DNA of 64,000 nucleotides from Ascidiella aspersa (GCA_963924565.1 OZ004608.1:15934001-15998000); one strand, 5' to 3'. Shown: positions 16,301 to 58,300, counted from the stretch's first letter. Notes: generated from the sequence alone by a model not told the origin. Numbers and translations are program-made.

Positions 16301-19300
16301 AACACGGCATTGTCTAAGAAGCCCATTTTAGACGGATATGCGGTGTACAACAAAACAAGAGTACAAAGATAAACATACCAAAAGCCACACATGTAGTGGG
16401 TGTATTTTGAATTTTGTGACAAAAAGAAAAAACCTACACCTTAACCAACGCACCACTGATGGTTATAAAAAAAAAAAACGATGATAAATTTTGTGATCGC
16501 AAGTTGATCACAGAATCAGATCAAGATACAACAGAACTGCTCAAACAATCAGACAAGTAGTCGAAAATGTACAAAACTACTATCTCTTACTTCCACTGAC
16601 AAAACAACAAGCAATACAAACTTTATTAAATGACTAATTAAAAACGCAGTATTAATCAGAAGACGCGTGACAAAGCGGCGAAGAAATTACTGCTTAACGG
16701 CAAATAGTTTCGCTGAATTAGTTCCAATTCCTAAAGTAATATAAAGTATCTGTGGAATAAATTAAAAGGTCGCAGACAAAATTTTTCGAAACTGTTCGCC
16801 CTGGGCGCGTTGGCCATTAATTGTTCTATAACTTGTGATCATTTAAAAAGAAGCAATAGTACGATCGGGGTCATCTATAATTGTCAAGACCTAACACTTT
16901 TTTTGCTTTATTATTTTCACTGTTGTAAGTTTCTCGTAGGAAGTTAACTTTACGAGACTCTTTCTAGGACTAATACAAGTCATGTCGCAAGAAGGAGAGT
17001 CGAATAATATCAAACCGTGATCAGTAAATCATGATGTTAAGAAATCAATTTTGTTTTGAACGAAAAAAATAAAGGTGACAAAGGCAATAGATAGGATGTT
17101 ACAAATCGTTTTTAATAAAGAGAAAAATTTTCCGAGGGGTTCGTAAACAAAAAAATCATTAAGGGGGACATTGGCATCCGCAACTCAAAAAATACAGCCA
17201 AATGTTGAGAAGTTTAAAAGCCGAAATACATCATTATAAATAATCAATTGACTATAGTTTATAACGTTGCGGCATTGACAATTTGTTTATCGAAAAAAGT
17301 TAGAAAACTAACCTTCATGTGCTGGTAAGCGTCCTCGGAATGTTCGAAAGATTCTGGGCAGAAGAAGCAAACGCAGGTCTGACTTGCCTCGTACCAACCC
17401 GACCAATCTCTGCAAAAAGACGATCACGTTTTTGCTCTAAGGAAATTTAAAAGTAAGCGACGAATGCGAATAAGACACGGCCCGTTATACGGCCATCGCG
17501 TGATACCGGGAAAGTTAAGTCGGTCGAATTTGTTGCTGGATCGGTATTGTGTTGTGTACACGAGCGTAGCGTGTCGATTTAATTAAGGAAAATGATGGGA
17601 TTGGCGGTGTCCTGCTGCCGCACAATTAGGAGAATTCGCTCGGGGTATGAATGGCGCGCCTATGCGAAGATTTTCTTCCCCGTCGCTATAACTCGACACG
17701 CTTATCTGCGGTCGCCCACGATGGGAATGACGTCAAAGAAGGTATTTTGCGCGGCTGCGGCCGCACGGACACTTTTGCAGCACGTGATAATTTTCGTGCA
17801 AAGTTTGACTTTCGCATAAGCCGGTTTCTGTATGGAGAAAAGTCGGCGTTTTTGCATGGCCCTACAGAAATCGATTGACTTTCAAAGGTAGGAAAGAGAG
17901 TTAAAAGGAACTTCCTATTGTGTTTTATGCAGAAATGAAAAATTGCAAATTGGGCTAGTGGTCGTCGAGTTGGGCAGAATAAATCAACGCGATGCTGAAA
18001 AATGTACAAATTTGGTCATAGTGTGGCTTGTGGCTGCAAAGCACTGTATAAACTATATAAACTGCGTTTATACCTAGAGCACTTATTGGGTAAAGTCTAA
18101 TGTTGGGGGAGTTTTTAGAAAAATTGTATCCGATTTATAACATAATTTGACGTAGGAAAGTACTAAGAACTCGCCCGAAGTTAAAAATGTAAATAGTAAC
18201 AACGTATGACGTGGCAATGTTTGTTGTTGGCGACGTGCAACTTAAAACGACAAACGAACCACATCACTACTTCGCATCAGCTATTGAGAGCAGAAGTACA
18301 TATGATTCACGAACATCATAAATGTATATTGATTCTGCTATTTACTGTTTTCGGTAAAATAAATTTCGGAAAGAAATGTCGAGATATTGGTGACTTGCAA
18401 AGCAAGCCAAAAGTTGGCCGTAAACATCGCAACAATATGACGCAACAAACTTGAAAAATTATGTCAAAAGGAAAAATATAAAGCTTGACGACGCGAGACA
18501 AACTTCCTACTATTCCTATGTTTGTAACACACGTATATTAATTGTAACATTTGTTCTTTCTTACACATATTGGCAAGGTAAGAAGTCGGAAGTATTTCTA
18601 AACAATAAACTTTCATTTACAAAAAAAATATTAATTTTCATTTCACAAAAAGATACCTAACTTTTGATATTTAATACTTTTGTCGCATTTAGGGAAATGC
18701 CCTAAGGTCTGGTCACCTTTCGTTGTGGCCCTAAGCTCCCGTGAAAAAGTATGATTGTTTTTCAAAAAACGTGTAAGTATAAAGGCAAATATAACACACG
18801 CATTACAAAATACAAACTGGAACTGTTCAAAGTTTCTGCTTAAGCCAGGACTAGATTAAATGTTGGCCTCAGCTTCAACATCTTAATTAATAATACTGCA
18901 CAAACATTGCGATTGAAGTAATCGATAGAGGAGGTGCAAATTAGAAGGTTAGCAAAACATTGTTTGTAGGTCATTGTAGGTCAAGTACAAGAGGTTATGT
19001 ATTCACAAAGACAAACAATAGCACGAAACACTGTGGGTATAGGAGAAAACCAAAGGGTATACGGAAAAAACACCAACAAGGGGTATACCGAAAAAACTAA
19101 AAGGGAATAGGGGAAAACTTAAACGGAACATTATATAGGAATATAGTTTTTTTTTTAGAACACACTGCCATTGAATCATTGCTGATACAAAGCAAATTCG
19201 TCGAAATCGGCCAATCCTTTTCGCGCCAACGGATAGACCCAAAACAATTCTATCCATTTAAACCATAATCAGGTTCCTAACTTAACAAGGATGGGCGAAA

Positions 19301-22300
19301 ACGTACACTTTAAGATTGCTCTGTATTCAAGGGTTGTAGCGTTTTTCGCAAATTGATGTGTCTCGTATTCCTGAAAAATGCGCAACTGCGAAATATTCAA
19401 GTCTGCGAACCACAACAGACAGTTGAGAAACCTTTTTCGCGAGGTAATTTAAAGGTTTATCTTAATTAAAATGCCGCCATGAGGTGATTGACAATACTTG
19501 TCTCACTACTAATCATTAAAAGCTGCAAAAGTGAGTTTGGTTTGTTAGGCCTACCGTTGTAAGACCGTCAACCAATAAGAAAATTTAACTAACGCTCTAT
19601 TTTTGCTGTGGATGTGCCGTACCGCACAAAAGCGAATAAATTAACACAAAAAATAAAAAGAGTGTCACAGGGCCCGCCAACATGAACTATTTCATCACAA
19701 TAAAGATTCAGTGTGATAAGAATAAAAATACCAATAAAGTTTCCGTTCCACTTAATCTCAACAACTTAATATGACTATAGCCTCCTAAATAATTGGCTTC
19801 ACGATACGTCAGACCAGAAAAACATATTTGTGAGAATATGGGCGGAAAATGACACAAAACACGCACAAAGGGGGTGGAGATCGGGCCCTGCCCCGCTCAA
19901 ATGCAGACAGCTGGTTCAACGTAAAAAGGTCAAAATCGTCGCAACAAAGCGCCGCCCTTCTCCGACGTCTCATGCTAGACGGGTGGGGTAAGGAGAAGGG
20001 GTCGGCGGGAGAAGGACGGTGGGTCAGGGTGAAAGCAGCAACAATGGGGCTCCTGTGAGAAAGAGAGGCCGACTTCGGTAAAAGCGACGAACGTTAAGGG
20101 TAAACGATCGTCGGGCCTTCTACGTGTGTAGGTGCACGGCGCGATTCGGGCACCGCGGAAGTCTGGGAAACTACACTCGCGATTCGATGTCGTCGGGGAC
20201 GTTATTTTTAGCCGCTGCTGACGATTCGCCTTTCGCTTTGACTTTACGGTTTGGTGAATGCGGTTGGCTACACAACCGCATCAGACTTTACCGTATTATC
20301 TTCGTGCTATTTTGTTGGTTTTATGCCCCGGCGGAAACTTTATATTTACACCGCGTACAAAAAGCACATGCACACTTTTATAAACAAGGGTTTTCAATAA
20401 ATTTTGTCAGTCAAGTTTAAAACAGAGCGTTTTTTAATTATTCTAAATGCTTTTTCGGAGAAAAATACGGACACTTTGATAAATTATATGAAAATACTTT
20501 TCAGACAATTTTGATTTAAACAAGAATTTGTCTGTTCAATTTTATTGTCAGCGAGAGGTACATTGCGTAAGGGATCGGATGTTTTATTTCAATTAGTCGA
20601 GTTTTCATTTTACTTGGTCATCATTCGACTTTATCGAGCATCTATAAACAAGCCTTATCGTTTCTACCTCTACATATCACCAAGTGTACTACAAGACGAA
20701 GCGTGTTAATCTGGGCGTTTTTACAAATGTTTACCGGTGAGTCGAATACTGGCCCCGAGGGCTCATAAAGAAAATAAATAATCTTCAACTGATAGAGACA
20801 AGAAACGCCAATGCTATAGTTTTGTTTATATACTCAGTGTTGCCTGCGGTTTAATAAGCTAATACCTTCGGCGCCGGGGTATAATGGAAGTGTTGTGTAA
20901 GAAGGTTGCTCACGCAAACACCAAAATGCGATTGAGGGCAGTTAGGATTTGGCCAACAAACCGTTTCGAGAAATGAAAATCCATTGTTGGTTTGTTTGCT
21001 GCCTCGCGGCATTAACTATGTGTTTATTATAAAGTACAAATCGACCAAAACACCGGACGACATTAGGCACATCTCCTGAGCGGATTACAAACACGACGAA
21101 TTTACCAAACGCTCTAAAGCGCTTGAAAAAAAAACGAAAAATAAAAACCGGTTTGACCTAAAACTCAGATTATAAATCGATTCGATTGGAGTTTTTGCTT
21201 GTTCGATAAACACACTTCAGTCACAAGTTTAATTACGAGTTGGTGGCTCGTAGTTTAGATGCAAGGGTAACTTGAAATAAAGCGAGTAGAATGTGGTCAG
21301 TTACGTTAAGACAATTTCGGCTTATGTTGAAAAAGAAAAAGCGTCCTATAAATCAAGATAATACGTTTTACAAAATTGACATATCGACAAATTTCGCGCA
21401 AACATACTCGCAGCTTTAATCCTGTACATCACTAGAAAGCCACAATGCCGTCGTGTGGAATTACCAGTCGAATAATGTGGGATTTTCTGTGTATGCCAGG
21501 ATAACGGCCTCGGCAAAAATGGGTACTAACGTGGCTACTTTAAAAGTGGCCGGCACCCTTTTTTAAACTTGTTCGAGGGCATGCACGTGTCCCGAGCGAC
21601 AAAAAAAACCGATTTGGCTTGATGTGGCTCTTGAAAACTGACTTAAATGAGAAACAATTGCTCGAAAAATAGCCTAAAAACCAACCGGCCCTTTTCAAGG
21701 ATCCAAATAAACTGGCCAAGATGTACTAGGAAGACCGTAATACGTAAGTCGCTGCTAGAACGAGCGGATTTCGCGTTCGCACTTGTCTGCGATTCGGTGA
21801 CAGCCAGACGTTTATAATCCTATTTGAAAGCGAGCGCAGGGAAGGTGAGCGTGACTTTTTTCTCTCCGACATTTCTGTTGCGACGACATTGAGGAAAGGA
21901 CTGGAATCTTAGTGGAGCGATTTGAATAGCGTTAGCAGGCAAGTTGGCGTTTTCGCATATTTTGTGCCATCGTGTGTTTTTATCTTAGGGCTTTCCGCGC
22001 ATTTATTTAGCTGAAACCTTATTGCATTGTTGTTTTCAGTTGAACCACAAGGAAAGTCATCGAAATGCAAAGGCAATATAAACACAGAGTAAGGAAACCT
22101 AAGGCTTAAATTGATTTAATTTTACAGTAGTGAGTGGAACTTCTCCTGAAAGTACTACATTTTATGAGGATAGTATTTAACGTTCAGAACAGAGCTGACA
22201 ACAGCAGAAGAACTTTAAGAATGTGAATCATTGTGTATTTTAAAGGTTCATGCTAACTACACTTGGCTGCGGTTTTACGACTGCTGTGCTAACAGAAGTT

Positions 22301-25300
22301 CGCCGTTAAACTGCATTCAAAGAATGGCAATCACGTCACAATGGAAATAACCGTATCGTTAAACTTTCGACTCGGGCGTCGCCACCCTCGGTCAACCAAT
22401 ACAATCGCCCTTTTATTGCACACAGGTTACACTTAAAACGGGACAGTCTGCCTAATGTTCGGGTACAGCCAAGGGCCGCAGACGGACGCAGAGTGCGGAT
22501 TTTCGTCGCGCTTAGAGCGAGCGGCGACGCGAAAGGTGAGAGGGGCGCGCTGTCGCATACTTGGGATTTTTTTCGCAGAACCAGAAAAAAAAATGAAAAC
22601 GGAACGGCGGCTTTATCGCAAAGCCGTAATTATGAGCGCTGGCAGGGCGCGCGAGCCAGCAAGAAGCGGCTGTTGCTTCCAGCGATAGAGAGGCTGCTTT
22701 ATGTGCTGTGACGTTGGTGCAGCAGCGCGACAAAGAAGTGACTTTTCGAGTCGCATTAGCGACCAGAGCCGCAGCAAAGGCGAGACGAGGCGCTATTATT
22801 AGATGGCAGATAAAAGCACACAAGCATTAGCGAAAGGTCCGTGAGGCGGCGACTGCAAATGGTGCATATTTCTCGAGGTCGACAAAACATTCCCGGCATC
22901 ACGCCGTTGATTTTTAAGTAGAGAAAAAACAGCGCCAGGTAAGGCTTGTGCTGGCTGCAGTCGAGCGCATCCGAGGGTGGAAAGGTGTTTAGGTTTGTCT
23001 CCAGGCAAGTGATCTGCCCTTGCTTAGAAATGTATACGGACTCGACGGTTTTGTCTTTGCTTAAAGGTCGCCCGGATCGCGCCCAGTAACGCGTGTCTAT
23101 TCAAACGCGCCGAGTCGAAAACTTGAAAGCAATCCTGTCGAAAGCCGAGGCGAAGTTTGCGTGAAAAGGCGCGACAGGTCTTTGTTTACAAACCCTCTGT
23201 CGGGCAAAAGCTGAGCTTCGCCATCAAAAAAAGGTCTCAGAAAGCGGCGATTGTTGGTGCTGGGGACAATAAAGCAGGCGCTGAATCACGGTTTGGCCAT
23301 CTTGTCAACAAAACCTCGCGCTCGCTGGCATGTGAAGGTGCCATTGACAGGAAATATTTGGCGTTTCGCCTGAGCGGTTAAGGCCTCGTCGCCGGTAGGA
23401 CAGTACGGACGACGCTTGAATGTAAAAAGAGAAGCGCTGATGGCTGACTGACTGTACGCGCTAAAGTAGCTAGGTATCAGCGTAAAGCCGGCGAGGAATT
23501 GTTAACGGCGCACGCCAGACTGGACACGTATAAGGCGAAAGTGGAAGACGCATAGAAGCAGCTAGCTTGCTGCACACGCGCCCACAAGAAAGAATCGAGC
23601 CTCAAAAATGCAGTCTTTGTCTCGGAGCGCCGACGCAGCGGCAGATTAGCGATCAGTAACAACATAGCTGAACGGCTTCGGCAAGAAAAGCTAGAAAAAT
23701 TGCGGCGCGAACGGAGCTTATTTTTTGCAGGTCAGAGACAGAAGCAGGTAACTATAGCCAACTCTTTAAAGCGTGACGGCAATAACTGCACTGATGTGTT
23801 GCCTTTACCTAGAACCGTTATTGGGCTTAGGCACATTAAAATGTTTGATCGCTCGCCCGTGAATTAGCTTTTAGCGTTGATTGGCGTTAGAAGAAGCTTA
23901 ATCTGCTTCTTTAGCTTCGGTCGCGGTTCAAAGAGTATTGAGCCGATCAAGATCAACTTTTTACAAGTTGATGTAAACTGCCTGAAATAATCTCTGGTTT
24001 TAGTTGTAGAGAATGTTATAGATTACAGGATGCGGTGGTTTTACTAGTCTACATGCAAACAGAATAGAAATAACTTTAGTTTTTTGTTAGTTCAAAATAT
24101 TAAACAGGTGACTGTAGCTTAAGCAGACAATCACTCAGCAAAGTTTAACATATATTAAAACTCTTACAGTTTCTAAAGATGTTTATTTATATTCTTTATC
24201 GTGCTTCCAATTTTGAAGCAGTACAATCTTCCTAACAAAAACGTAAACGTAGTCAATGTTTTACTGTTAACAGTGGAACTTAACTAGGTTTTTGTTTCAC
24301 CATTTTCGAAATTTATAAAAAAAATAACGTAGCTGGTCACGGCCTGAAGGTCAATACACTTTTGCAGCTATCGCAAATTGGTCAATCTAAAAAAAATAGT
24401 GTATGTTACGTGACCAGGGTAGAAATTGGGACCAGTCAGGCTTTCGAGGCGACCATGCGTAAACTGGCCTAAAATAGCTAGAGGCGTAAGCGGCAGAAAA
24501 CACAGGAGATTTATGAATGGAAAGATCGCCGGACGAAGAAGGGGATAGCGGGCGGTTGATTGTGACGCGTCAATGGTCGCACCACTCCTTGAAATAAGTT
24601 CATGGTCAGGTGCGAAAGCTGAATCAGTACAAATTAGCAACGCATACTCGATCGCCTTGGTCAGGTTCCTGCTCTGACAGTTGTTTGTTGTCGTTTGACC
24701 ACCAGCCCTATGAGACCCACAGCACGCCGGCAAAAGGGGCAAGGAGTTAAGTCATGTGTAAAAATAACAAAAATGGAAAGTTTTCTAAAGTAAGAGCCTA
24801 TTTCCAAGATTTGCATGTATTCACGAGAGCGTGTAATTGGCAGACTGTTAATCCTAAAGGGCAAGCCGGCAGCGATTCGCTTAAGCCAGGACCGATTTGC
24901 AGAGTAATGAGCAGTTGGTCGAGACCTTTGCCGTAATCACTAAATTAAACCGACTCGTTTCTGTTGTGTATCATGCGTGTGTTGAGAAAAGCCTGATGCT
25001 AATACGCACAAAGATGGGTTATTTTGGAATAGAGATTAGCAGTAAATAAACATAGGTCTTTGGAAAAAAGTAGACGAAAGAAAGTTTTAGGCCGGCTTTA
25101 AACAAGAGACGCGAAACTTATTTTCCCATCTCGGACTTTTACAAATAAAGTAAGGCTATAGTTTTCCACCCTGTGTTTTCAAGCGTTTTGACATTTTAGC
25201 AAAAAAACACAGCGTGGATACGACGGCCGACCTATTTTGTTGAGCGAAGCTTGTGTGCGATTTTTCCACGGCGAAAACTTGACACCTAAGTTAGTGTCTT

Positions 25301-28300
25301 CTTTGTACGCGTCAGCATTCAAGAGGCGCAAACACAAGTTGTCAGCCACACGTAATATATACTTGCATTCTTTGCAGCGAACTAAGAACGACAGTTAGGT
25401 AACTGCTCCTGAATATTAAAAACACTCCTGCCTTGCTGAATAGGCATAAACTGTGGCTCATTTCGTCGGATTACCACCGAAAAGCAACAAAGGACACCGT
25501 CACCGGAGTATCGACGCCTCGAAGGCTTCTAACACATAGCACAGGTCTGTGACGTAGGCCGCCGTCGTCGGCATTTTTGGCGCACCTGATCCGGCGTCTC
25601 GCGCATTTCGGGCGAGCCTTAAAAAATCGTGAAAGGTGTCGGATAATAATACGCCGCTGAGGCCGGAAGGAAGATTTTGATAGGAGGCGAAAAGTCGACC
25701 GCCGAAATTAATTGCCCAAAACGAATCGGAACTCGTTTTGTTATTTCGCTGACTTGTCAGCGCTCTTGGAAATGGGGTTCGGGGAATAGGGGTAAAAAGT
25801 TTCCGGGCACAGTGACCTTTCGTGAGTTTACCTTTCGGCAACAAAACGTTTCGTGTACATCGTAAACTACCTTTGAGCTTATTTAAGTCTCGGGCTATGA
25901 CAACCTGTGATAAACCAACACGTTACAATGAAACAGAAGATGTTTGACAGTATTGGTGACCTCACTTAAACTATTTTAGAACAAAATTGAGTAAATCACT
26001 TACTCAGCACACCAACAATTAAGTATACGTTAAAAAGATTTAGACCTCGTCATACTATTTTAGTTTCAAGTTTCATTAACTACATTGATTACGTAGCGAA
26101 ATTTCGGCATACGTAACGCGATTTTCGTCCGTTCGATTTCACCAAATAAGGCCTCAAAAATTAAACTGATTACTGTCACCTTAAGATCCTTACCCGGAAA
26201 AGACAATTCCAAAGGAGAAAGCGCCAGCACTTTGTAAGCGACTAGGAGCAACACCTTCGCAATGAACAGCGCTCATTAACTTCGGCAAACAAGGAGTGTT
26301 TAAACGATTTAGTGAAAGCGGTTATAGTAGCGGAAGCAACGCATTTTTATCCGCTTAACGCTTCGACTGCATGTGACGCCCCGTGTTTGTCGCCAAACAG
26401 CGAAAGGTTCGCTGTCTGACGTCATCTTATCTAGGGCGACACGCGACACGACGGCAAAAGGCGGTCGTGACATCAGAGCTGTCGCAAATTGCACCTTTGA
26501 CCGGGATACGTGGTATTCTGGCTGAAAAACATAACTACATTTTTCGTACGTGGCAAAACATAACGAAACCGGTTACCTGCCTAAAGCATAGGTACAAAAA
26601 TTAGCTCAAACGGGTCAGTCTTTTGTTTGTTGCAAAATAGTCGCTAATATTTATGAAATAATTAACCAAACATTTTGCAAAAAAATATTAAAATAGGGTT
26701 GGTAATAAAGACCAGTGCTTCTCTTTTTCAACCTGTGGCACCGCAGAAAATAAAAAGAAATAAGCGGCATTTTTTTCACAAAAAACATAAGAATAACCAT
26801 AAACACGGTACCAGGATAAGGTAGCGAGCAAACACCGTAATGTTATCAGTTATATAATCATGGATAGTGTACATCCAAGTCTCGCTTGCTTGACTTCATA
26901 CCAATTTGTAATACAAATTGGATACTTTTTGAAATTACAAAAAGTTGTAATACTAGTTTGACGCGGCACACTGTTTGAGAATCACCGATAAAGACATTAC
27001 TATTGACAGGATTGTATGGACACGTCTTAATTAAGATAATGTCGATCTACTAGACCTTTTTAGCTTTGCAGTTCATTATTAAGCTACATTACAGATCCGT
27101 GCATAGTATATCCAACGACATTAGTATTCCTGGTTAAATTAAAACAATTGTGGTTTATCATGTTTCGCATCCAGCAAAAAATTGAGGATTAAAGCATGTT
27201 CTTAGTTCCAGATATTTAAACGTAAGACACTATAAGGTGTCAAGAGGTCACCCCAAAATTCCATCGGCACACTATAAAAGCGAAATCCGAAAAATTGCGC
27301 GAAAAGCACGTTTGCCTGAAAGGCCTGGCGGAGAAAAGTGACGGCGACTAGCAACTTAACTTTTCGCAACATGATGGGGAGAAGTGGTGAAATAGAGCTC
27401 AAGAGATTCCGTTATCTGATGTGCCAACAATGCCGAACATCGTGACAGACTGTAAGTGCGTCGGGATCGCTGGGAAATTAGCGGGCCACAAAAACAAAGG
27501 GCTCGGAGTGAGTCAGTCGCGCTTAGCTGCTGCTCGAGGCGGCTAGACTTGCCCAAGGCAAAAAGCAAGGATTGAGGCGGCCGTTACGCCCGGTTAGCTT
27601 AAAAACAAAGGAGAACAAACGTTGGGTGGTGCTGCAAGACAGGATCCTGCGGTTTAAGGTGAGACGTTCCGGCAGTCCCGCGTGCCTCGTTGACGGACGT
27701 TAGGCAAAGAGGTAAACATGATAAAACGTCGGTCTTTAGGCAAGATCAAGCGACGGGGACGATTGGTGGCACGCTGCCCCCTTTGCACTCTTCCGAGGCC
27801 CAGGTGCAATTTCGCTTTAAACCGCTGCTTCGCGCCGAGGCCGAAGCCAAACAGACGCAGAACGGATTAAGCTTTAATTAAGTGGAAACGGCGTGCGGTT
27901 GGTTCGCCTAGCATTCGAAGCTATTGAGACAGCAGCGAACTGCTGCCGAGAGTTCCCACGAGTGCGTAAACACTTCAAGTTCCAACGCTATACTTCTGTT
28001 GAAATCTGATGCGCTGCTGTAGAGCAACAACAGAGGGCCAAACACAATGTGTTCAAAAATAAAAAAAAGAAGATACATTTCGGGTAAAATAGTAGAAGAA
28101 TACTCTTACAAAGCTAGTAATTTGGGTCAGACACTTCTGCTATTACTGATCAGGAATTAAGGTCGACATTTATCTTGCAAGGGTTAGGGTGATTTCTATT
28201 ATTACATATTTAGTTCTACGTTCGGTAAAATAACACAAGCTTCGGGGTAAATACCAAAAGTGTAGCAACAATACAAATCACGTATCGTTAAAATAAAGTT

Positions 28301-49300: not shown

Positions 49301-52300
49301 GGAATTTCGGTGTAAATTGCAGTTGTGACCGACGCCAGCAGGTGCTGCGGCTCGTTTCCGACTACGAGCTTTTAAACAACTCACTTGAAGTTTAACCGCA
49401 ATGCACATGATATGGCGCGCTCATTAATAACAGGCCGTCAGACAGGCTCGCAGTGGTTGAGTGAAATGTGAAAACTGATCTGTATTTCCGAAAAGACACA
49501 ATGAAATACAACATAAATGGGTAACAAGCCTTCTCTCAAGTATTCTGCTTAACAATGAAGTAATCAAATCAAAGCAAAAATGTGTAGGAAATTCGATTTA
49601 ACAAGACGTTTGTTCAAGGACTAAATTTTTCAACTTTGAGGGACAAATAAAAACTATAAAGAGCTGTTAATGCCACTACAAACGTCTGGGCCTGTTAATT
49701 TTTTTTTTACTTTTTGTTGAAACTAGCTATGACCTATCTACTTACAAAGTAACAATCTACTTACAATCGTTTCGGATCCAGACATGAAAACAAAGTACAG
49801 GAACTCTTCTCTGTAAATAACATAACTTGGCACCAATCCATGACTTCTCCTGCTTTAACAATTTTTCATAAAAACACCCAACAAAACCACCTCTTATGCA
49901 CTCAGGTCCTAGAGTACGGCACTCCCAAGGAGGTGCTGGGACTCAACAACCAGATGACACAGATCCTCCACCAGCTCCTGGAGGCGCATCCGGCACACGC
50001 CTACCACAAGGCCGAGGAGTCCGACTCAATTAGCTTCGACACGAATGCCGACGCGAGCGTGCGCGTCATCAGGGACAACCTTGGCAAACTAAACACGATC
50101 AAGACCGCCTTCGACGAGCAAGTCAGCAAGGTGAGTGGGCGGCTAGACGCAGTGTAACGTGTTTAGGTGCAGGCTCGAGGTTGCCACTTTTATGAAATGA
50201 ATTGAATGAAAAACAAAGTCCCTTGAAAGAAGGAATATAGGTTTTCAATGACTAAAAATTGGATAATTGAACGTGTTTTGAATATAGGTCAAAAACAAAA
50301 CAGTACAATAACGACAACAACAACAACAATAAAAAATATTTAAAAATTGGTTTTACAGCGGCATTTTCTAAACACATGACATTATCTTGACATGATATAA
50401 ATTTAAAGTCGACAAAGGTTTTGAAAGATTTAAATACCGTGTGGCAAATCTGTCAGGTTAGGACCTTTGAAATTTAGAGGCAGCTTTCATAACATCCATT
50501 ATGTGGTACTAAATTCTAACTTAGATGAATTGCATTCGGTAAACGGTAAATCTATCAATTTTATTAAGTTTGGGCCAAACCTGGTATACACCAAAACACT
50601 GAATTAAAAACAAGTATACAAAAAGAGTCAACTGAGCCAATATAGATATGATCTTTATTTCACCAATGTGTCGTTGATCACACTTGCATCAAACTTCAAG
50701 CTCTGAACCCAATTTCTTCAGTATTTTACAATAGACGTTATTTTTCGATTTATTTTCGCAGATTCTGCGACAACTCGACTCGTTCTGCGTCAGCGATTCC
50801 GCGCTGGTGGTCAAGCAGAACGGCAGGGTTCACTTTCACCGCGAGGAGTCGACCGAGACCAAGCTCGTGCTACAGGTAAGCAACAAAACACACCAGCAGT
50901 AAGGGGCACACACCGCAACTAACCATTGTTCGGCAAAGGGCCTTTGGCGCCGGGGTATTTGTAGCATCAAAGGCGGCACTAGCACGCTCCGTAAACGCGC
51001 GTTTGTAGGCGGGGCCTGCAAAATGCACGCACCAGTAATCGGCTTAGAAAATTTGCTGTTATTTAAGGAAGAAGCATTGAGTCATATATCCGTGGCGCTT
51101 CGGATGATTAGCTCGATTTCCTTGCGTAAACGATTAAATCACGCGCTGCATTTTTTCTTGAAAAAGCAAAACAAAATCGAATTTAGCCGGGAGATAAGCG
51201 TGCGTTTTCGGCGGTTAAATCAAAGTTTTAAAAGTAGATCGCGCGTAATTCCGCAACCGACGTAACCCCGGTTCCGCTAATTTAACATCGGCCTTTGCAC
51301 GCAGCTCGGAAAACAGGGAATCTCTGACGGCGAGTTCGAGTCGACCCCGAATTTGGCGGTGAACTCGGTGAACGAGGTGATCACGGCCGACTTCGACGGT
51401 GCCAAGATCCAAATCTTCGACAAGCAGGGAAACTTCAAGGACTCCTTTGTCACTGAGGTAAGGCGCACTTTAATAGTTTTTAACATGCAGGCAGAATTCT
51501 AAAACTTCTTTCAGTTAAGTGTTTTTAAAATAGGAAGATTTAGGGGCTGCCTTGACTTTTCCTGAATACAGCAATAATTTCCGAACAAAACTAAGAAGTC
51601 AAATCGAAGCTCCAGTCTGGTGCAATAAATACGACCGCAGCTGTTCCCGTGGTACATTGTTTACTTTTCACTTACATGGGCATTTAGCGGGAGTGCGTGT
51701 TGACCAAATACGCGCATTTTGTTTTTGACGAGTGTCAAACCCTTCAGCATTAATGGTGTTGCGGAAACGCCGCAGTAGGTGCATTACGACTGGCGAGAAG
51801 CGGCTCGCCATTTCGGCAGCGCGTCGCATTTGTTGTTGTTGAAAACCAAGAGCGGTCCAAAACAAGGGCGGCTGTAAAGAGCCGAACTCCAGGTGCGGGA
51901 CAAAAATGCGGTTGCAGCGACCAAAGCGGGCCAGGACTCACGCACTAAAGGTTAAACCTGCAGGTCGCGGACGAGAGGCGCGTTAGAGGGCGACGGCGCC
52001 GCGGTCCTGGCCGCTCTCGGTTTACAAAACAACAACCTGCGCAAGTCGGAAAGCCCGCGCAACTCTGGGCTGATAGCGATCGCAAGCGCAGAACAACACG
52101 CGGGGACTTTTTGTTTGCCTTTCCCACATTCGCGCCACCCCTGAACCTCGGGGGGTCATTGTGGGCGCAGCGCGGCATGACAAGGGTGAGTGGCCCGTTG
52201 CCCCCGCCCTGCCCCCCCTTAGCGAACATCACCCAAAATTTTAACAGTAGAAACGTGAGCGTTTTGTTGTTGGATCTCCCGCCGTTTGTATTCGTGAAAA

Positions 52301-55300
52301 CGATGATGATGGAGCAGAAATCTCCTTAATTGTTGTGTGGCAGTAACAACTATCGCGATTTCGTGTTCTTAGCACGTGTTAAACAGTAGACGCCGATTCG
52401 CCAATGAACAATGATCGATCTGTCTTCGAATACGGGTCGAGCACGGAAACGTTGACGTTTCGAGGCCGCGAATCGCAAACACAAAAACTCTTTTGCCAAC
52501 TCCCGACAACAATCAAAATGCCGGCGTGTTCCAACACCTACTTAAGCAGACACGAATTCGTATTTCGGGGAAAGAAGGTGCGGCGTTTCGCCCAAAATAA
52601 TGCGTGAAAATCGTAGTGGCATTTACATAGCGGACCGGCGGCACGTCACATGCTTGTTGCGCCGATTTGTCGAATCCTCTGTGGAGCACACAAACAAAAA
52701 GGCCAAGTCAAAATTACCATTTACATATACAACATCGGGTTTACAAAAGTTCACACAGGCGCGTTTAAACCAGGCCCGAGTAAAGAATTTCCATCTGCGA
52801 TACTTTCTAAAACATTTATAACATCCAAAACATTGCACTCTATTTAGTTATGGTTGAAACTTATGGCAGTCAACAAACGCAAAAAAACAAAATAAAGCGG
52901 TTCCTTTACAATCCCCCCTATTAATTGCGTTCTTTAAACCCAGGGACCAGCGACAAAAACAAAAACGGCGACCAAATGTTCAATTACCGCGCTAACAAGC
53001 CTTAATTCTGCAGTTTTGTGTGTTTTTCGCAGTATACATTATACAGTCTATCGTGTTTTAAAGGGTTGCTGACGTGGTGACCTTCGGTTCTTTCGTCACC
53101 CTGCACGTTAATTTCTATGTTTATTTGCATTTTGTTTTACAAAACCAATACAAACGTGCAAATAAAACATCTATCTATCTAATTCTCCCGACGCAGGTCA
53201 ACAAGCGCATGTGCAAGCCGGCGGGTATAGCGATCCTGCACAACGACGACATAGTGGTGTGCTGCGAGGACCAGGTGCACATCTGGACGCACGAGGGCAA
53301 GAGCGTGCTGGGCTTCGGCAAGGGCCAGTTCGGCAACTGCTCGAGCATCGCGGTCGACGCTGACAACCGAATTGTTGTGGCCGACGTCGGCAAGCACTGC
53401 ATCTCCATACACACGTGAGTGGAAGCCGTTTGTTTTTACACTTTTCCCAGGCTTCTCTATTTTCTGATATAAAACTGAGCGGTGGATTAGGTCGCTCAAT
53501 TTTTATGGAACAGTTAAAAGTGGGTAAATTATCGGCAGACAAAGAGGGTCGAAACCAGACGTATCGTTGTTGATTACATTTTGAAAAAAAAAAAACTGCC
53601 ATGATTTAAAAAACAGCAACGAATGACGTTACATTTGAAATGTAACTAAAAATTACAAACCTTATTCCGTGTCAACAACAACAGGTTTGCAACACCTTTT
53701 AATGAAATAAACCTAAAGACATTCATGGGCTTTTTAAAAGAAATTTATGACTTTTTAAAGACCCAAAGCCACCACTCGTCAAGTTTTAATCCAATTCAAA
53801 AACCAAAATAAAATTTTATTTTACTGCGGGACGTTCAAAACATATACCCTAGGTTGTAAACAAATTCGAAGATTAACTATTTAGGACTTTAAAATACATC
53901 AAGATTTTATGACTTAAATTAACTGTAGCGTTGCCTTTATTTTATCGCGTTGCGTTGCTTTTATTTCATCTGTTAAACGTATAACTAGTGGGGACCTTCT
54001 TTTTGAACCTTTGTTTTCGATGCGCAGTGACGACGGCAAGCTGGTGACGCAGTTCGGTGCCCAGGGGAAGGGGGAAAGCAAGCTGGTGGAACCCCGTTAC
54101 GTGGCATGTGACTCGCAGTGCAACGTCATCGTGTCAGACGGCGGCGATTGCAGCGTAAAGAAATTCACTTCTCAGGTACGTTTTGAAATTTTGTATTAAG
54201 CAGTGGATTTGCTTTTCGCACATCTATTTGAATTCGCTTGTTTGTCGTTAAATTGTCAGTTTTCAGTTACAAAAGTTGTCAGAGAAACTTTTCTGGGACA
54301 AACAGAAAAGTGCAAAACTTCCACCCGAATTTTCCTATGTTAACTATTAAATAGACAGGCGGTCGAAACCGAAAAATAAATCCTCCTAATAATATAATGT
54401 AAAATGTGAGTTTTTATACATTTCTACCACTGATCTACTATACTATTCAACGTAAAACAGCGAGCAAAAACTGCCATTCCACTTTCCAAAACCCAAAACG
54501 ACACTTTAAATTGTCCAGGGCGAGTTTCTGCTGAGCTTCGGCGCCGAGGGACCTGAACGGGGTCAGTTCCAGGGCCCCAGGGGCGTCTGTACCGACCGCT
54601 ACGACAACATTCTGGTGGCGGACTGCTGGAATCACAGAGTGGACATTTTTACCCCGGACGGCTGCTTCATGCGTCACATCGCCACAGGTAATGTGGATAT
54701 TGAATTACTACTATAGCCGAAACACTGTAGTTGGTGATACGGAAACAGGCATATCTGCCATCCAACGGCGTTAAGGATAATGTGGAACGGTTAAATGTAT
54801 TTTATCATCGTTTCAACTTGGTAGCAACTAACAAGTATTTCACACTGATTAGTTATTAAAGCTGTGGGATGACAAAACATAGGGACGGTTAAACTGTAAA
54901 GCAAAGAGGCCTCGTTTCGATTTCGTCTTTACTTTCTGAACAAAATTAAACTCGGAAGGTTGCCTCACACTTTAGTGCACGTAGTTTGAAGATAAAGCAA
55001 ACCTGTCAATTGTAAGCATTATATCACGAGCTTGCAGAAACAATAGCTTGGACATTTAACTGTACTTGAAATAGCGCCTGAACGACGTAAGCCCAAGAAA
55101 ATATACTTGTAGTAAGATGAAAAACCGCTAACGTGTGCTAACGTGAAAACCTTAGCGTCATTCCTGTTAAGAACGTCCAACAGAGAATAATATAACTAAT
55201 TTCGCGTAGGAGCAGACAGTCTCCACTTCCCTTGGTGCATCACGCTGACCAGCAGCGGCAGGCTCGTGCTGTCCGAGGACTACAGCTGGTCGGTGAAGGT

Positions 55301-58300
55301 CTTTGAAGTTCCAGGTGAGCGGAATCTGTGTTCTAAAGTTCGCGCAAACACGCCAGGGGTGAAATACATTCCGAAAAACTAAAATAGAAACCAGGACCAG
55401 TCAAAATATTTCAGAATGCAATCCGTACACAAAGATTAATGTTTTTGTTTTAATTAACGATTTCGAAAGTATGTGCGTTAAGGAAAATACTTTTACCAAG
55501 AAATAAATTTAATACATGACGTTTAGCGGAACCCGGGGCTCATCAGTGGTGGTGGCAATTAAATGAAACTAAAGTAGCTTTTACCGCCGATTAATTCACT
55601 CAGTCGCACTGACAATTTACTCTTGAAACTGGCCCCAAACGAAGGGAACGTCAGTAACCCCAGACCCCAATATCGGGCAACGCTAACGGCCGTATATCGC
55701 TCGGCAGAATACCGCAACTCGTCTTCGATTTCGTCGATGGATGAGATAATGTCGCCGACGCCGATTATGCCCGACTTCGAGCAACTTGCGGGTCAGATCG
55801 ACCTTCCCAACCTTCTCAGCAACAAGGTCTCGTGGTGGCTCACCTCGCCAAATCACAGCGACGGCGAGCACCAAGGTAAAAAATACTGAAATCTGCATGA
55901 CCGCTACATGATTTCTAATAGCACGTTTAATGGTGAGAACAATCAAAGATCCTTACGCAATTTTTAAGTATTTTGCTAACGATTATTTTGGAAGCTAAAT
56001 TTCAGATCTACACGTTTTAAAAACTTTTCGAGACGATATATATTGTTTGACCCGGGTTTGACTACCATCCTACAGCAATATTAAAAATAAAGTGAAAATA
56101 TATCCACATTTACAAATAAGCAAACAATCTTTTCGCCAGCAGGGCATCGCCACAACGAGCTGCACAACACAATCGCAACCAGCAATGTTTCGCGCAAACC
56201 CACGCGCTGCCTTCCCAGCAAGAAGTCCTCGTCCAGCGACAGCGATCTGACGTCGGTCGCTCAGCCAACCGTGGCCTCGCCCAGCTACGTCACGCCGGTG
56301 ACGTCATACAACGGCGGCGAGGTGACGTCGAATGGGATCCGGCACGGCAGCAGCACGAGCCTGAGCAGCAGTAACAGCGGCAAGGTGTCCTTCTCCGGCA
56401 AGATAGCGCCACCCAGCGAGCAGGTGCAGCCCGGGTTGGTGAACGGATCGTAGGAAAGTTCTCGAAGCTTTCTTCGAAGAAAACAAAAAAACTACTGTCG
56501 CCAAATGGGCGCCGCAGCGACGGGCCTCGACCCGAGGAGAGAAGCGGTGTTGTACTTTGTTTATGTTGGTTTATGCAATGTTTATCGCTTTCCAAACTTG
56601 ATCTCCGTGCGTGCCGGACTAGGCAACACCAAAAACAACGACAAAAATCAGATGACGTTTTTGCTAAAACAATTATTGCCGGACACTCAAGCACAATCCA
56701 TGTTGGTCGTTGAACAGGTGTTGCTACGCGAACGCTTGTTGTTTATATGGCTGCAGTTTACTACCTTTCCCTGCAAGCGCGTTGTTTTGCTGTATATGGT
56801 CGTTTTGTTGTTGTAGTTGTTTCGGGCGGGAGTCATTTTGTTCGAAGTTGTACAGTGACTGCCGAAAATCGACACTTTATGATGCGGAAATATTGTATAT
56901 TTTGAAATTTTTGTTACTTTTTATTCGCCAAATATGCCCTTTTTTCGTTGGCTTCCTTACTAAACCAAATAAAGTACTAAATCTTAATTTGCTCGATCGT
57001 ATCAGTTCAGGCACTTCATGCAAACATGCAATTATTTATCTAGTTATGGAAAGATCTAACGAAATAAAACGAATTAGCTTTGATGTCCTCAACAATGCGC
57101 AACAAGATTAACACAAGTAATCGCGTCCGGATTGTTTATAAACCAGTATTAAGGATTTATAGTTAAAATATGTTAACGGGTAAATCATGAAGTGAAATGT
57201 TACATTTAGTAAGCAGATGGAAAACATATGGACATTATTAGTACCTCCACAGTCAGTATACAATCTGGTCATAAAAGCAGAAATGTAAAATCACTCGAGA
57301 TAGGTTGAGAATCGAACAAAATCGCTATCACCAGCTACTGTGTTAAAACACAAATAAACTTTACATTTAAACGAGAATTATTATCAAATCAAGAAAATGT
57401 CATCCCTTCAGCCATTCAACATATTCAATCCCATAGCAAAAATTTCTGTGTTTCTTGGTCAACATTTTTAAACCGACAAAAACTGAAAAAGGGTGCGATG
57501 TATACCCGTCACAAATACACTTCTATCACAAAACAGCCACAACTGAATTGGCTCAAGCATGCTTGGATTGCATGTCAATAAATCGAAACAATCTTCTATA
57601 GAATACTGAACTATTTCTGCTGTACACTAAATAAAAATGATTGATCAAGACTTACTCGTTTGGATCCAGTCGTTCAGACTCGCTTTGTAGGGTTTCCCAG
57701 TTCTTTCCCAGCTCCTGAAGGAAAACGATATTAAGCAGTGTTGTAAACAAGCCAGCAAAACTTAAGTTTAATCAAGTATAGTTAAACAAATAACAAGCAC
57801 AAGTCCCAGTTAAGTCATAATTAGAACAAGTCAATTCCAAGTCTAGTCCTTGTCGTAAAAAAGTAACTCGACCGATTATGAGGAATAACTCCCCTAAAAA
57901 ATAACAAAGGCAACATCTAGCAAGCAAATTGTTTGATGTACAAAACTTTGCTATTTCATGAATTAGCATTAAACAAATTTATTCCAGGTTTGTTAACTTA
58001 GAAAGCTAACGAGTGAGACGTTATAACTTTCCACTTTTCAGTGATGTTGTAAATTATTGTAGTCCGGTTTTAATTTAGGGCCATGTAATTACGATGCTGT
58101 AATGATTTGAGTTTCAATATGGCTCGGACCTTAATCTGATCTGGCTTTAAAGGGTGCATGTAAACGGGCTTAACTGCATCTTCACAACCAAATTAAACAC
58201 TCAATTAATTTGACCGATACTGCGGAAAATTCTGAACTAATTGAAAATTAAAATCAAATAAGACATATCTTCATTTAGGCATAAAACTTTGCACACAAGC

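What the first reader, a model, noticed from the sequence alone, without database searches (positions are those of the whole stretch)
17410..57655. A complete multi-exon TRIM-NHL gene and its ~23-kb regulatory domain are nested antisense in one 40.2-kb intron of ZNF277
Seen: the ZNF277 peptide ELGKNWETLQSESERLDPN|E|DWSGWYE is split by a phase-2 intron of 40,246 bp, while the other 11 introns are 0.1-3.1 kb. The intron holds all 14 core exons of an opposite-strand TRIM-NHL gene, its 3'UTR (poly(A) signal ~680 nt from the host exon) and its upstream islands. Nested genes exist in animals, but an intron-rich gene that fills almost the whole host intron is unusual, and gene predictors would probably split ZNF277 in two. 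Inference: convergent transcription over 36-40 kb implies polymerase interference or mutually exclusive expression. It may also give long pre-mRNA complementarity between a ribosomal-protein-associated zinc-finger gene and a probable post-transcriptional regulator.
Basis: partly seen in the sequence, partly recalled or inferred. Interest (0 to 1): 0.75.

Follow-up and report, generated by a model that had tools for sequence, protein, structure and literature searches.

The report
TRIM-NHL gene nested inside ZNF277 intron
In this sea-squirt genome a complete 14-exon TRIM-NHL gene lies backwards inside one 40-kb intron of the ZNF277 zinc-finger gene, a real but ordinary gene-within-a-gene arrangement of a kind that is common in animals.

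Summary
On the minus strand, ZNF277 exon E9 ends at 57656 (GA|GTAAGT) and E10 starts at 17409 (TTTTTGCAG|A). That gives a phase-2 intron of 40,246 nt. Full-length ZNF277 proteins of Ciona and Clavelina align in order across it, and exons E10 and E12 occur once in the 308.6-Mb genome. The intron holds a plus-strand gene with RING, two B-boxes, a coiled-coil region and six NHL blades. I chain it as 14 phase-consistent coding exons (43153-56453, 2,541 nt).

RNA-like contigs and stranded RNA reads confirm three ZNF277 introns and two 3' introns of the nested gene.

The 57656>17409 junction itself was not seen. A spliced contig stops exactly at 57656, and an unspliced contig crosses that donor.

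Host/nested pairs are common, and this scan has already noted several in other parts of this genome.

Two things are new but unproven. ZNF277 straddles a sharp CpG/GC boundary. Some host RNA may also end unspliced against the nested gene's 3' end.

Interest is low.

The parts
63344..64000 (-). ZNF277 coding exon E1, the acidic N-terminal region. The ATG lies at 64003-64001, 1-3 nt beyond the window end.
   Evidence: The ORF extends into L009 and the first M is at 64003. Donor CAT|GTAAGT at 63344/63343.
62918..63014 (-). ZNF277 exon E2
   Evidence: Acceptor tttcag| and donor AAGG|GTATGT read from the sequence. The peptide YVYDEK... resembles the same motif in the Ciona and Clavelina proteins printed.
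62446..62614 (-). ZNF277 exon E3 (first zinc-finger motif)
   Evidence: tblastn 62-71% identity; splice sites.
61605..61779 (-). ZNF277 exon E4
   Evidence: tblastn E down to 6e-25; boundaries.
61406..61489 (-). ZNF277 exon E5
   Evidence: tblastn 78-87% identity; boundaries.
60897..60969 (-). ZNF277 exon E6
   Evidence: tblastn. The donor is confirmed by the RNA joint 60600>60897, seen in 3 X4 reads and 1 X3 contig.
60555..60600 (-). ZNF277 exon E7
   Evidence: RNA joints 60600>60897 and 60344>60554; tblastn.
60213..60345 (-). ZNF277 exon E8 (C2H2 finger, PF12756)
   Evidence: Pfam zf-C2H2_2 at 35.1 bits against a cut-off of 26.9. 86-91% identity to the Ciona and Clavelina proteins. RNA joints.
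57656..57714 (-). ZNF277 exon E9, the last exon before the large intron
   Evidence: RNA joint 57713>60212, seen in 1 X4 read and 1 X3 contig. The X3 spliced contig ends exactly at 57656. tblastn 73-75% identity.
17410..57655 (-). ZNF277 intron 9: 40,246 nt, phase 2, GT..AG
   Evidence: It is 79% of the 50,816 nt from ATG to stop.
17313..17409 (-). ZNF277 exon E10 (DWSGW... and the start of the last zinc finger)
   Evidence: tblastn E 2.5e-7 to 3e-7. Single copy in the genome.
13977..14167 (-). ZNF277 exon E11
   Evidence: tblastn E down to 5e-17; boundaries.
13188..13365 (-). ZNF277 exon E12, including the stop codon at 13190-13188
   Evidence: tblastn 83% identity, E 4e-27. Single copy. ORF end.
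17410..43139 (.). 25.7 kb of the intron upstream of the TRIM-NHL start. No recognisable gene. GC 0.44, CpG o/e 1.29.
   Evidence: 0 of the 10 longest ORFs have a Pfam family. 0 Rfam hits. Only two short repeat stretches were scored. Composition.
43153..43374 (+). TRIM-NHL exon 1 (ATG, RING finger). An acceptor-like ...TATTGCGCAG| sits at 43139/43140, 13 nt upstream of the ATG.
   Evidence: Pfam RING families, E 3.2e-9. Sequence. Donor AAG|GTAGG.
44314..44598 (+). TRIM-NHL exon 2 (B-box 1). The start is approximate.
   Evidence: Pfam B-box hits below the cut-offs (21.3 and 19 bits). Donor ATG|GTGAGT. The acceptor was chosen by eye and phase.
45588..45722 (+). TRIM-NHL exon 3 (B-box 2)
   Evidence: Pfam zf-B_box at 28.4 bits against 24.1; splice sites.
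46937..47095 (+). TRIM-NHL exon 4 (coiled-coil region)
   Evidence: Splice sites and phase 0. The coiled-coil character is inferred from the sequence only.
48696..48824 (+). TRIM-NHL exon 5 (coiled-coil region)
49906..50130 (+). TRIM-NHL exon 6
   Evidence: Donor AAG|GTGAGT scores 9 of 9.
50762..50875 (+). TRIM-NHL exon 7 (linker; no filamin domain detected)
   Evidence: Pfam found nothing at E <= 1.
51305..51457 (+). TRIM-NHL exon 8 (NHL blade 1). The start is approximate.
   Evidence: PDB matches to the Thin and TRIM2 NHL domains, E 1e-26 to 4e-22. Donor.
53197..53414 (+). TRIM-NHL exon 9 (NHL blades 2-3)
   Evidence: Pfam NHL at 37.7 bits. PDB match to TRIM3, E 3e-15. Splice sites.
54028..54175 (+). 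TRIM-NHL exon 10 (NHL blades 3-4)
   Evidence: PDB match to TRIM2, E 3e-20.
54519..54687 (+). TRIM-NHL exon 11 (NHL blades 4-5). The start is approximate.
   Evidence: Pfam NHL at 29.7 bits. PDB E 9e-46. Single copy; the next-best paralogues are 38-49% identical.
55210..55314 (+). TRIM-NHL exon 12 (NHL blade 6)
   Evidence: X3 contig of 129 nt whose first 30 nt lie off the stretch I laid (taken as the previous exon) and whose remaining 99 nt lie at 55213-55311. Donor CAG|GTGAG.
55708..55875 (+). TRIM-NHL exon 13 (C-terminal tail)
   Evidence: X3 depth is 63 here, against 0-2.7 over 55301-55700 and 4.9 over 55901-56100. Acceptor and donor. The phase fits.
56140..56453 (+). TRIM-NHL exon 14, coding part (Ser-rich tail, stop at 56451-56453). 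The 3'UTR follows.
   Evidence: The X3 contig starts at 56141, with a 30-nt overlap on the unspliced contig. The in-frame ORF ends at 56450.
56968..56973 (+). AATAAA poly(A) signal of TRIM-NHL, 683-688 nt from host exon E9
   Evidence: X4 plus-strand RNA reaches 56701-56900, and there is none in 56901-57500.
56920..56925 (-). The only AATAAA or ATTAAA on the minus strand between 56.3 and 57.7 kb. It is a candidate poly(A) signal for unspliced ZNF277 transcripts.
   Evidence: The function is inferred.
56141..57685 (.). Stretch covered by one unspliced X3 contig (depth 37) that runs from the TRIM-NHL last exon across the host donor into E9
   Evidence: table 8, record 21. The strand is unknown.

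Best explanation
This is an ordinary host/nested gene pair in an ascidian genome.

ZNF277 (minus strand, 12 coding exons, 1,959 coding nt, ATG 64003 to stop 13188) is one gene. Its ninth intron (17410-57655) is 40,246 nt long.

Inside that intron, on the plus strand, sits an independent single-copy TRIM-NHL gene. It has 14 coding exons (43153-56453, 2,541 nt). Its domains are RING, two B-boxes, a coiled-coil region, six NHL blades and a Ser-rich tail of about 160 aa. The poly(A) signal is at 56968. No filamin domain was found.

What is shown: the splice sites, the collinear homology, the single-copy status, splicing of the host's upstream introns, splicing of the nested gene's last introns, and RNA from both genes in the same samples.

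What is inferred: the host pre-mRNA is transcribed through the nested gene and spliced from 57656 to 17409. Only that splice supplies the last zinc finger and the conserved C-terminus. A direct junction read is missing.
For: - GT..AG sites with good consensus and matching phase.
- 9 of 11 and 3 of 3 ZNF277 homologues have collinear HSPs on both sides of the gap. Ciona P0152 residues 379-402 map to 57729-57658 and residues 405-435 map to 17408-17316.
- E10 and E12 each occur once in the genome. There is no second ZNF277 in 7 loci that matched the E8 ORF.
- E10 has no start codon of its own, and E10-E12 keep open frames at 47-83% identity to Ciona.
- The coding lengths of both exon chains are multiples of three.
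- RNA joints 60600>60897, 60344>60554 and 57713>60212 were seen.
- An X3 spliced contig (depth 87) ends exactly at 57656. It overlaps the unspliced contig (depth 37) by exactly 30 nt. That is what a k=31 graph branch at the donor would give.
- DNA-like contigs of X1 (2,919 nt) and X2 (4,157 nt) bridge the TRIM-NHL 3' end and E9.
- The window contains no N.
- TRIM-NHL domains were confirmed by Pfam and PDB.
Against: - No read or contig joining 57656 to 17409 was seen. Only about 6% of RNA run X4 was read, the stretch I laid did not include 17409, and 177 loose ends were not shown.
- The kinds of X1-X3 are not on record, so 'RNA-like' and 'DNA-like' are my inferences.
- The left end of the intron (17.4 kb) was not checked against independent DNA contigs.
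- The host's 3' exons differ sharply in composition from its 5' exons (GC 0.54 against 0.37; CpG o/e 1.09 against 0.60). That is not expected of one uniformly treated transcription unit.
- Several TRIM-NHL exon starts (exons 2, 8, 11) were chosen by eye and phase, without a homologue or reads.
Confidence: 0.85

Rival explanations
1. The host is functionally split. Most ZNF277 transcripts do not splice at 57656. They read through (GAG TAA gives ...NE-stop) and end at a minus-strand poly(A) site near 56.9 kb, tail-to-tail with the nested gene. The product is a truncated protein without the last zinc finger. E10-E12 would then be used rarely or by another promoter.
For: - An X3 contig (depth 37) crosses the donor unspliced. 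Other ZNF277 introns have depth 2-5 and the spliced exons 87.
- The only minus-strand AATAAA in 56.3-57.7 kb lies at 56925-56920, about 45 nt from the plus-strand signal.
- X4 plus-strand RNA stops before 56901.
- CpG depletion covers only E1-E8.
- A Clavelina gene model ends with the same read-through stop.
- Nested genes are reported to induce intron retention and cryptic polyadenylation of hosts (PMC3192792, abstract read).
Against: - The strand of the X3 contig is unknown, so it could be a long 3'UTR of TRIM-NHL.
- Depth 87 against 37 leaves room for a majority spliced path.
- E10-E12 are well conserved, open and single copy, with no start codon of their own.
- X4 shows no coverage over 56901-57500.
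Confidence: 0.2
2. Assembly artefact. A 40-kb block carrying the TRIM-NHL gene was wrongly placed between two adjacent ZNF277 exons.
For: A sharp GC and CpG change lies near the right end of the block. The left junction was not checked against independent reads.
Against: - Two DNA-like runs have contigs that bridge 55101-57843 and 55101-58018 without a break.
- There is no N in the window.
- The composition change does not coincide with the intron ends. It lies at about 60 kb, and E10-E12 share the 'inner' composition.
- A Clavelina model truncated at the same junction suggests a long intron there in another genus too.
Confidence: 0.03
3. The 25.7 kb upstream of the TRIM-NHL start is not only that gene's regulatory domain. 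It holds further unannotated units, such as 5'UTR exons, an outron, lncRNAs or small genes, so the intron hosts more than one unit.
For: - An acceptor-like site 13 nt before the ATG implies cis- or trans-splicing from upstream.
- The stretch is largely unique DNA with GC 0.42-0.48.
- X4 has a few minus-strand reads inside the nested gene's intron.
Against: - 0 of the 10 longest ORFs have a Pfam family.
- 0 Rfam hits.
- No RNA data were laid on this stretch.
Confidence: 0.3

Closest known systems
Host/nested gene pairs of animals, for example TIMP genes inside a synapsin intron (conserved from Nematostella to human, including Ciona)
   Same: A complete, independently transcribed, multi-exon protein-coding gene lies in reverse orientation within one intron of an unrelated host, and that intron is the host's largest. 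PMC2825198 (passages read) shows this in Ciona. PMC11694760 (sections 4-5 read) gives 12-17% of genes as hosts, about 75% of nested genes inside one intron, and a preference for the largest intron.
   Different: The gene pair is different (ZNF277 and a TRIM-NHL). Conservation of this nest in other species was not tested. The nested gene has 14 exons against five for TIMP.
TRIM32 nested antisense in an ASTN2 intron (human 9q33.1)
   Same: A TRIM-NHL family gene transcribed from the opposite strand inside an intron of a larger host (PMC8282839, discussion passage read).
   Different: That paper calls TRIM32 'a small gene'. From recall, not from any call, its coding region is a single exon. The gene here has 14 coding exons, two B-boxes and a long C-terminal tail. 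The host is unrelated, and no orthology to TRIM32 was shown.
Transcriptional interference by nested genes: intron retention, exonisation and cryptic polyadenylation of host transcripts upstream of the nested unit
   Same: RNA that runs unspliced past the host donor just upstream (in the host's sense) of the nested gene's 3' end, with a candidate poly(A) signal there (PMC3192792, abstract read).
   Different: Here the strand and the 3' end of that RNA are unknown, so the phenomenon is not shown.

Membership tests
Host/nested gene pair (nested gene wholly inside one host intron) | The two host exons flanking the nested gene are joined in the host mRNA | tested here: inconclusive
   Collinear homology, matching phase and single-copy exons support it. 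The X3 spliced contig stops at the donor. No junction read was seen.
Host/nested gene pair (nested gene wholly inside one host intron) | The nested unit is a complete independent gene (own start, ORF, stop, poly(A) signal) with no exon shared with the host | tested here: met
   ATG at 43153, 14 phase-consistent exons, stop at 56451-56453, AATAAA at 56968, all inside 17410-57655.
Host/nested gene pair (nested gene wholly inside one host intron) | Both units are transcribed | tested here: met
   Spliced X3 contigs for both genes. X4 reads are oriented oppositely over ZNF277 exons and over the TRIM-NHL 3' part. Depth in X4 is low.
ZNF277 (uS5-associated C2H2 zinc-finger protein) | Full-length collinear similarity to proteins named ZNF277 | tested here: met
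   The window aligns exon by exon to Ciona 'zinc finger protein 277' (P0152) and Clavelina 'zinc finger protein 277-like' (P0151) over residues ~160-557/560.
ZNF277 (uS5-associated C2H2 zinc-finger protein) | C2H2 zinc fingers, including the C-terminal ones needed for uS5 binding (PMC10216425, passage read) | tested here: met
   PF12756 at 35.1 bits against 26.9 on E8. A C-x2-C...H-x3-H pattern spans E10/E11 in the alignment. Binding to uS5 was not tested.
TRIM-NHL proteins | N-terminal RING finger | tested here: met
   PF13445 at 37.1 bits against 25.2 and PF00097 at 35.8 bits against 21.
TRIM-NHL proteins | B-box zinc finger(s) | tested here: met
   B-box 2 scores PF00643 at 28.4 bits against 24.1. 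B-box 1 is below the cut-offs (19 and 21.3 bits).
TRIM-NHL proteins | Coiled-coil region after the B-boxes | not tested
   Exons 4-6 look heptad-rich and charged by eye. No coiled-coil predictor was run.
TRIM-NHL proteins | C-terminal six-bladed NHL beta-propeller | tested here: met
   Pfam NHL is above the cut-off in 2 ORFs. All 5 NHL ORFs match solved NHL domains of TRIM2, TRIM3, TRIM71 or Thin at E from 9e-46 to 1e-5. The count of six blades comes from reading the exon peptides. No structure was predicted.
TRIM2/TRIM3/TRIM71 subtype (with a filamin/Ig domain before the NHL domain) | Filamin-type Ig domain between the coiled coil and the NHL domain | tested here: not met
   No filamin family at E <= 1 in the 5 ORFs between 50.6 and 51.3 kb. 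A divergent or split domain could be missed.

The most novel reading that the evidence does not exclude
The nest makes the host gene bipartite. The nested TRIM-NHL sits in a CpG-replete, GC-richer compartment that is presumably unmethylated in the germ line. That compartment also takes in the host's last three exons, while the host's first eight exons lie in a CpG-depleted, presumably body-methylated block. The transition falls at about 57.7-60.2 kb, in the intron just before E9, and E9 itself is intermediate (CpG o/e 0.80). Just downstream, at the E9 donor, a sizeable share of host transcripts fail to splice. They end tail-to-tail against the nested gene's 3' end. The result would be a ZNF277 isoform without the last zinc finger, which in the human protein matters for uS5 binding. 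The nested gene's chromatin and transcription would then set the ratio of full-length to truncated host protein.
Probability: 0.15. Interest if true: 0.5.

Novelty: new member of a known kind. Interest (0 to 1): 0.18.

Why it matters
- **Annotation.** ZNF277 should be modelled as one gene across a 40-kb intron. A Clavelina model shows how it gets truncated. The nested TRIM-NHL has two extra 3' exons and a long tail that an ORF-based reading misses.
- **Biology.** It adds one more antisense nest to a genome that has many. It is not surprising in itself.
- **Worth a cheap follow-up.** The CpG/GC boundary inside the host, together with unspliced RNA at the host donor, makes this a compact locus for study. 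It could show whether a nested, differently marked gene changes host splicing, termination or gene-body methylation in an invertebrate chordate.

Tried and rejected
- **Junction reads.** The one read-laying run covered 55101-61100, the donor side only. It showed three upstream joints but no 57656>17409 read. X4 was thin (117 reads laid, about 6% of the run read), and 177 loose ends were not shown.
- **Synteny in relatives.** The only hint is the truncated Clavelina model.
- **Full-length TRIM-NHL homologue.** None was obtained. Exon-sized queries cannot reach 800-aa proteins through the search for homologous proteins (length rule), so I did not spend those searches. The exon chain rests on splice consensus, phases, Pfam or PDB per exon, and X3 contigs.
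- **The protein-atlas search on the B-box exon.** It gave only generic TRIM and B-box clusters (best score 0.91) and does not discriminate.
- **scan_promoters_terminators.** It uses bacterial consensus sites and is irrelevant here.
- **Rfam at gathering threshold.** 0 hits in the window.
- **Repeat content of the upstream 20 kb.** Only 39 of 1,861 first-look candidates were scored, so 'repeat-poor' cannot be claimed.
- **RNA editing as a sign of sense-antisense pairing.** The X3 differences at 57616 and 57647 are also present in DNA-like run X2, so they are polymorphisms.
- **Second ZNF277 copy.** The 148 matches are almost all to residues 50-100 of the query, which is an intronic repeat. ZNF277 proteins gave nothing below E = 0.27 in L002-L008.
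- **Literature.** 'ZNF277' plus 'nested' gave 2 papers (listing only), neither about gene nesting by its title. Supplements were closed and were not needed for any claim here.

Full report
**What the window is.** The window is G000:C2:15934001-15998000 of a 308.6-Mb assembly in 75 contigs. It contains no N. The closest ZNF277 proteins come from the ascidians Clavelina lepadiformis and Ciona intestinalis, so the genome is a tunicate's.

**The junction.** On the minus strand the exon that encodes ...ELGKNWETLQSESERLDPN ends ...AAACGA|GTAAGT, with 57656 the last exon base. The next coding sequence starts after ...TCTTTTTGCAG| at 17409 and reads (A)GATTGGTCG..., that is (E)DWSGWYE. The intron is 17410-57655, 40,246 nt, phase 2. 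A script that listed every GT/AG pair compatible in frame and length with the Ciona protein ranked exactly this pair first, 3 nt off the expected length.

**One gene or two.**
- A library-wide phmmer search with the ORF around exon E8 gave 499 hits at E <= 0.001.
- Of 11 of these proteins run by tblastn against the window, 9 had HSPs on both sides of the gap, always in order. Two (P0004 and P0036) hit only the 5' side.
- Three more proteins (Clavelina XP_076813908.1 of 560 aa, Ciona XP_026691408.1 of 557 aa, and a 612-aa protein from a 2.6-kb contig) all matched E10, E11 and E12. Two of the three matched E9.
- In Ciona, residues 379-402 fall on 57729-57658 and residues 405-435 on 17408-17316.
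- E10 and E12 each have one match in the whole genome, themselves.
- The many genome matches of the E8 ORF are to an intronic repeat. ZNF277 proteins found nothing below E = 0.27 in the seven best such loci.
- E10 has no start codon of its own.

So the two halves are parts of one single-copy gene.

**ZNF277 structure.** There are twelve coding exons:

| Exon | Coordinates (minus strand) |
|---|---|
| E1 | 64003-63344 (ATG just outside the window) |
| E2 | 63014-62918 |
| E3 | 62614-62446 |
| E4 | 61779-61605 |
| E5 | 61489-61406 |
| E6 | 60969-60897 |
| E7 | 60600-60555 |
| E8 | 60345-60213 |
| E9 | 57714-57656 |
| E10 | 17409-17313 |
| E11 | 14167-13977 |
| E12 | 13365-13191, stop at 13190-13188 |

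The lengths sum to 1,959 nt, which is 653 codons. The introns are 329, 303, 666, 115, 436, 296, 209, 2,498, 40,246, 3,145 and 611 nt. The large intron is 79% of the ATG-to-stop span.

**The nested gene.** Pfam finds the following on plus-strand ORFs:
- a RING finger (E 3.2e-9);
- B-box 2 (28.4 bits against a cut-off of 24.1);
- a weak B-box 1, below the cut-offs;
- NHL repeats (37.7 and 29.7 bits against 20).

All five NHL ORFs match the solved NHL propellers of TRIM2, TRIM3, TRIM71 or Drosophila Thin, with E from 9e-46 to 1e-5. No filamin domain appeared at E <= 1. The gene is single copy, and the next-best NHL loci are 38-49% identical.

Splice consensus and phase give a chain of 14 coding exons:

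| Exon | Coordinates (plus strand) |
|---|---|
| 1 | 43153-43374 |
| 2 | ~44314-44598 |
| 3 | 45588-45722 |
| 4 | 46937-47095 |
| 5 | 48696-48824 |
| 6 | 49906-50130 |
| 7 | 50762-50875 |
| 8 | ~51305-51457 |
| 9 | 53197-53414 |
| 10 | 54028-54175 |
| 11 | ~54519-54687 |
| 12 | 55210-55314 |
| 13 | 55708-55875 |
| 14 | 56140-56450, then the stop |

The successive intron phases are 0,0,0,0,0,0,0,0,2,0,1,1,1. The total is 2,541 nt, which is 847 codons.

That step is left out.

**Reads (stretch 55101-61100).**
- Runs X1 and X2 have even depth and contigs of 2.9 and 4.2 kb across 55101-57843 and 55101-58018. I take them as DNA. They bridge the nested gene's 3' end and host exon E9.
- Run X3 has uneven depth and spliced contigs, so I take it as RNA. 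Its kind is not on record.
- X4 is a stranded RNA run of which about 6% was read, with 117 reads laid. First mates lie on + over ZNF277 exons and on - over 55.9-56.9 kb. This fits a minus-strand host and a plus-strand nested gene.

Three host introns are confirmed: 60600>60897 (3 X4 reads and an X3 contig), 60344>60554 (X3) and 57713>60212 (1 X4 read and X3).

For the nested gene:
- X3 depth is about 50 on exon 12, falls to 0-2.7 over 55301-55700, is 63 on 55705-55876, and is 4.9 on 55901-56100.
- A new contig starts at 56141.
- With the donors CAG|GTGAG (55314) and AAG|GTAAA (55875), the acceptors at 55708 and 56140, and matching phases, this shows two further introns.
- The reading frame ends at 56451-56453.

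**What the reads do not show.** No read or contig joins 57656 to 17409. The stretch I laid could not contain 17409, and the loose-end table was cut. There is indirect support. The 268-nt X3 spliced contig (E6-E7-E8-E9, depth 87) ends exactly at 57656. The unspliced X3 contig 56141-57685 (depth 37) overlaps it by exactly 30 nt. That is what a 31-mer assembly graph produces at a branch. A second path leaving the exon at 57656 is therefore implied, with depth of about 50 by subtraction. This is my inference, not a direct observation.

**An unexplained RNA.**
- The unspliced contig at depth 37 is far above the depth of other ZNF277 introns (2-5).
- Its strand is unknown.
- One reading is that the TRIM-NHL 3'UTR runs on past the AATAAA at 56968 and overlaps host exon E9.
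- The other is that part of the host RNA reads through the donor (GAG TAA, an immediate stop) and ends near the only minus-strand AATAAA, at 56925-56920.
- X4 shows plus-strand RNA up to 56701-56900 and nothing over 56901-57500, which mildly favours the second reading.
- A truncated protein would lack the last zinc finger. In human ZNF277 the two most C-terminal fingers matter most for uS5 binding (PMC10216425, passage read).
- Nested genes have been reported to cause intron retention and cryptic polyadenylation of hosts (PMC3192792, abstract read).

**Composition.**

| Region | CpG o/e | GC |
|---|---|---|
| 8-60 kb, in 2-kb bins (0.82-0.98 over 2-8 kb) | 1.0-1.4 | |
| 60-74 kb, in 2-kb bins (down to 0.12 in 1-kb bins) | 0.2-0.8 | |
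| -30 to -26 kb and -14 to -10 kb | 0.40-0.71 | |
| ZNF277 exons E1 and E3-E8 | 0.60 | 0.37 |
| Introns among those exons | 0.41 | 0.29 |
| ZNF277 exons E10-E12 | 1.09 | 0.54 |
| Introns among E10-E12 | 1.27 | 0.35 |
| TRIM-NHL exons | 0.97 | 0.57 |

So one gene straddles a compositional boundary at about 57.7-60.2 kb. In Ciona, gene-body methylation marks broadly expressed genes and depends on genomic position rather than on the promoter (PMC3827831, abstract read). CpG depletion as a proxy for germ-line methylation is established knowledge. Methylation here is inferred.

**The upstream 25.7 kb (17410-43139).**
- GC is 0.42-0.48.
- 0 of the 10 longest ORFs have a Pfam family.
- There are 0 Rfam hits in the window.
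- Two short repeat stretches were scored (only 39 of 1,861 candidates were scored).
- An acceptor-like site lies 13 nt before the ATG, so the mRNA probably starts further upstream or is trans-spliced.
- Nothing shows that this stretch is a regulatory domain, and nothing excludes it.
- The known transcribed part of the nested gene fills about a third of the intron, not almost all of it.

**Comparison with what is known.**
- Host/nested pairs are common. 17% of human and 12% of mouse genes host one. About 75% of nested genes lie within one intron, preferentially the largest, with only a slight bias to the opposite orientation (PMC11694760, sections 4-5 read).
- Multi-exon TIMP genes lie antisense in a synapsin intron across animals, Ciona included (PMC2825198, passages read).
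- A TRIM-NHL gene, TRIM32, is nested antisense in ASTN2 (PMC8282839, passage read).
- This scan has already noted other nests on other DNA of the same genome, among them a 39-kb CEP290 intron with several genes and GPR22 in COG5. These are AI notes that I did not check.
- A search for 'ZNF277' with 'nested' gave two papers, neither on this topic by title (listing only).

**Verdict.** The arrangement is an ordinary member of a well-known kind. Mutual exclusion is not supported at sample level, and interference is unproven. The composition boundary within the host and the unspliced RNA at the host donor are the only unusual points, and both need stranded RNA and methylation data.

Noticed in passing
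window 60081-60212 (minus strand, intron after ZNF277 E8) and 57.7-60.2 kb generally: This intron is packed with high-copy repeats. The translated stretch after E8 matched at least 140 places genome-wide. Word depth in DNA-like runs reaches 76,000-137,000 at 58301-58500 against a baseline of 61-115. The scan's hammerhead note (s1-806549, 58359-58490) lies inside this very high-copy element. Rfam at gathering threshold found no ribozyme in the window.
   Followed up: partly
window 60000-64000 and G000:C2 up to +74 kb; also -30 to -26 kb and -14 to -10 kb: CpG depletion is mosaic: blocks with CpG o/e of 0.2-0.8 lie in a background of 1.0-1.4. One block boundary falls inside ZNF277. Its 5' exons have GC 0.37 and its 3' exons GC 0.54.
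   Followed up: partly
window 55708-56453 (+): The TRIM-NHL protein carries an unusual Ser-rich tail of about 160 aa after the NHL propeller. It is encoded by two extra exons that an ORF-only reading misses.
   Followed up: partly
window 10244-11332 (-): A 363-codon open frame with several hydrophobic stretches lies 1.9 kb downstream of the ZNF277 stop on the same strand, in a GC 0.44 patch. It has no Pfam family at E <= 0.01.
   Followed up: partly
window 4011-4760 (+) and 8035-8787 (+): Two open frames of 250 and 251 codons have no Pfam family. Their nature is unknown.
   Followed up: partly
window 27006-27115: A repeat of about 110 nt has at least 39 copies at 83-89% identity across the chromosomes, often in nearby inverted pairs. 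It looks like a MITE.
   Followed up: no
window 55540 and 55580: Both DNA-like runs lack 3 and 15 nt here relative to the assembly, inside a TRIM-NHL intron. Many single-base differences also separate X2 from the reference, so the population is highly polymorphic.
   Followed up: no
Clavelina lepadiformis proteins P0004 and P0151: Two annotations of the same Clavelina gene differ. The 392-aa model ends at the junction homologous to 57656 with a read-through E-stop, and the 560-aa RefSeq model continues. This hints at a long intron at the same place in another ascidian order.
   Followed up: partly
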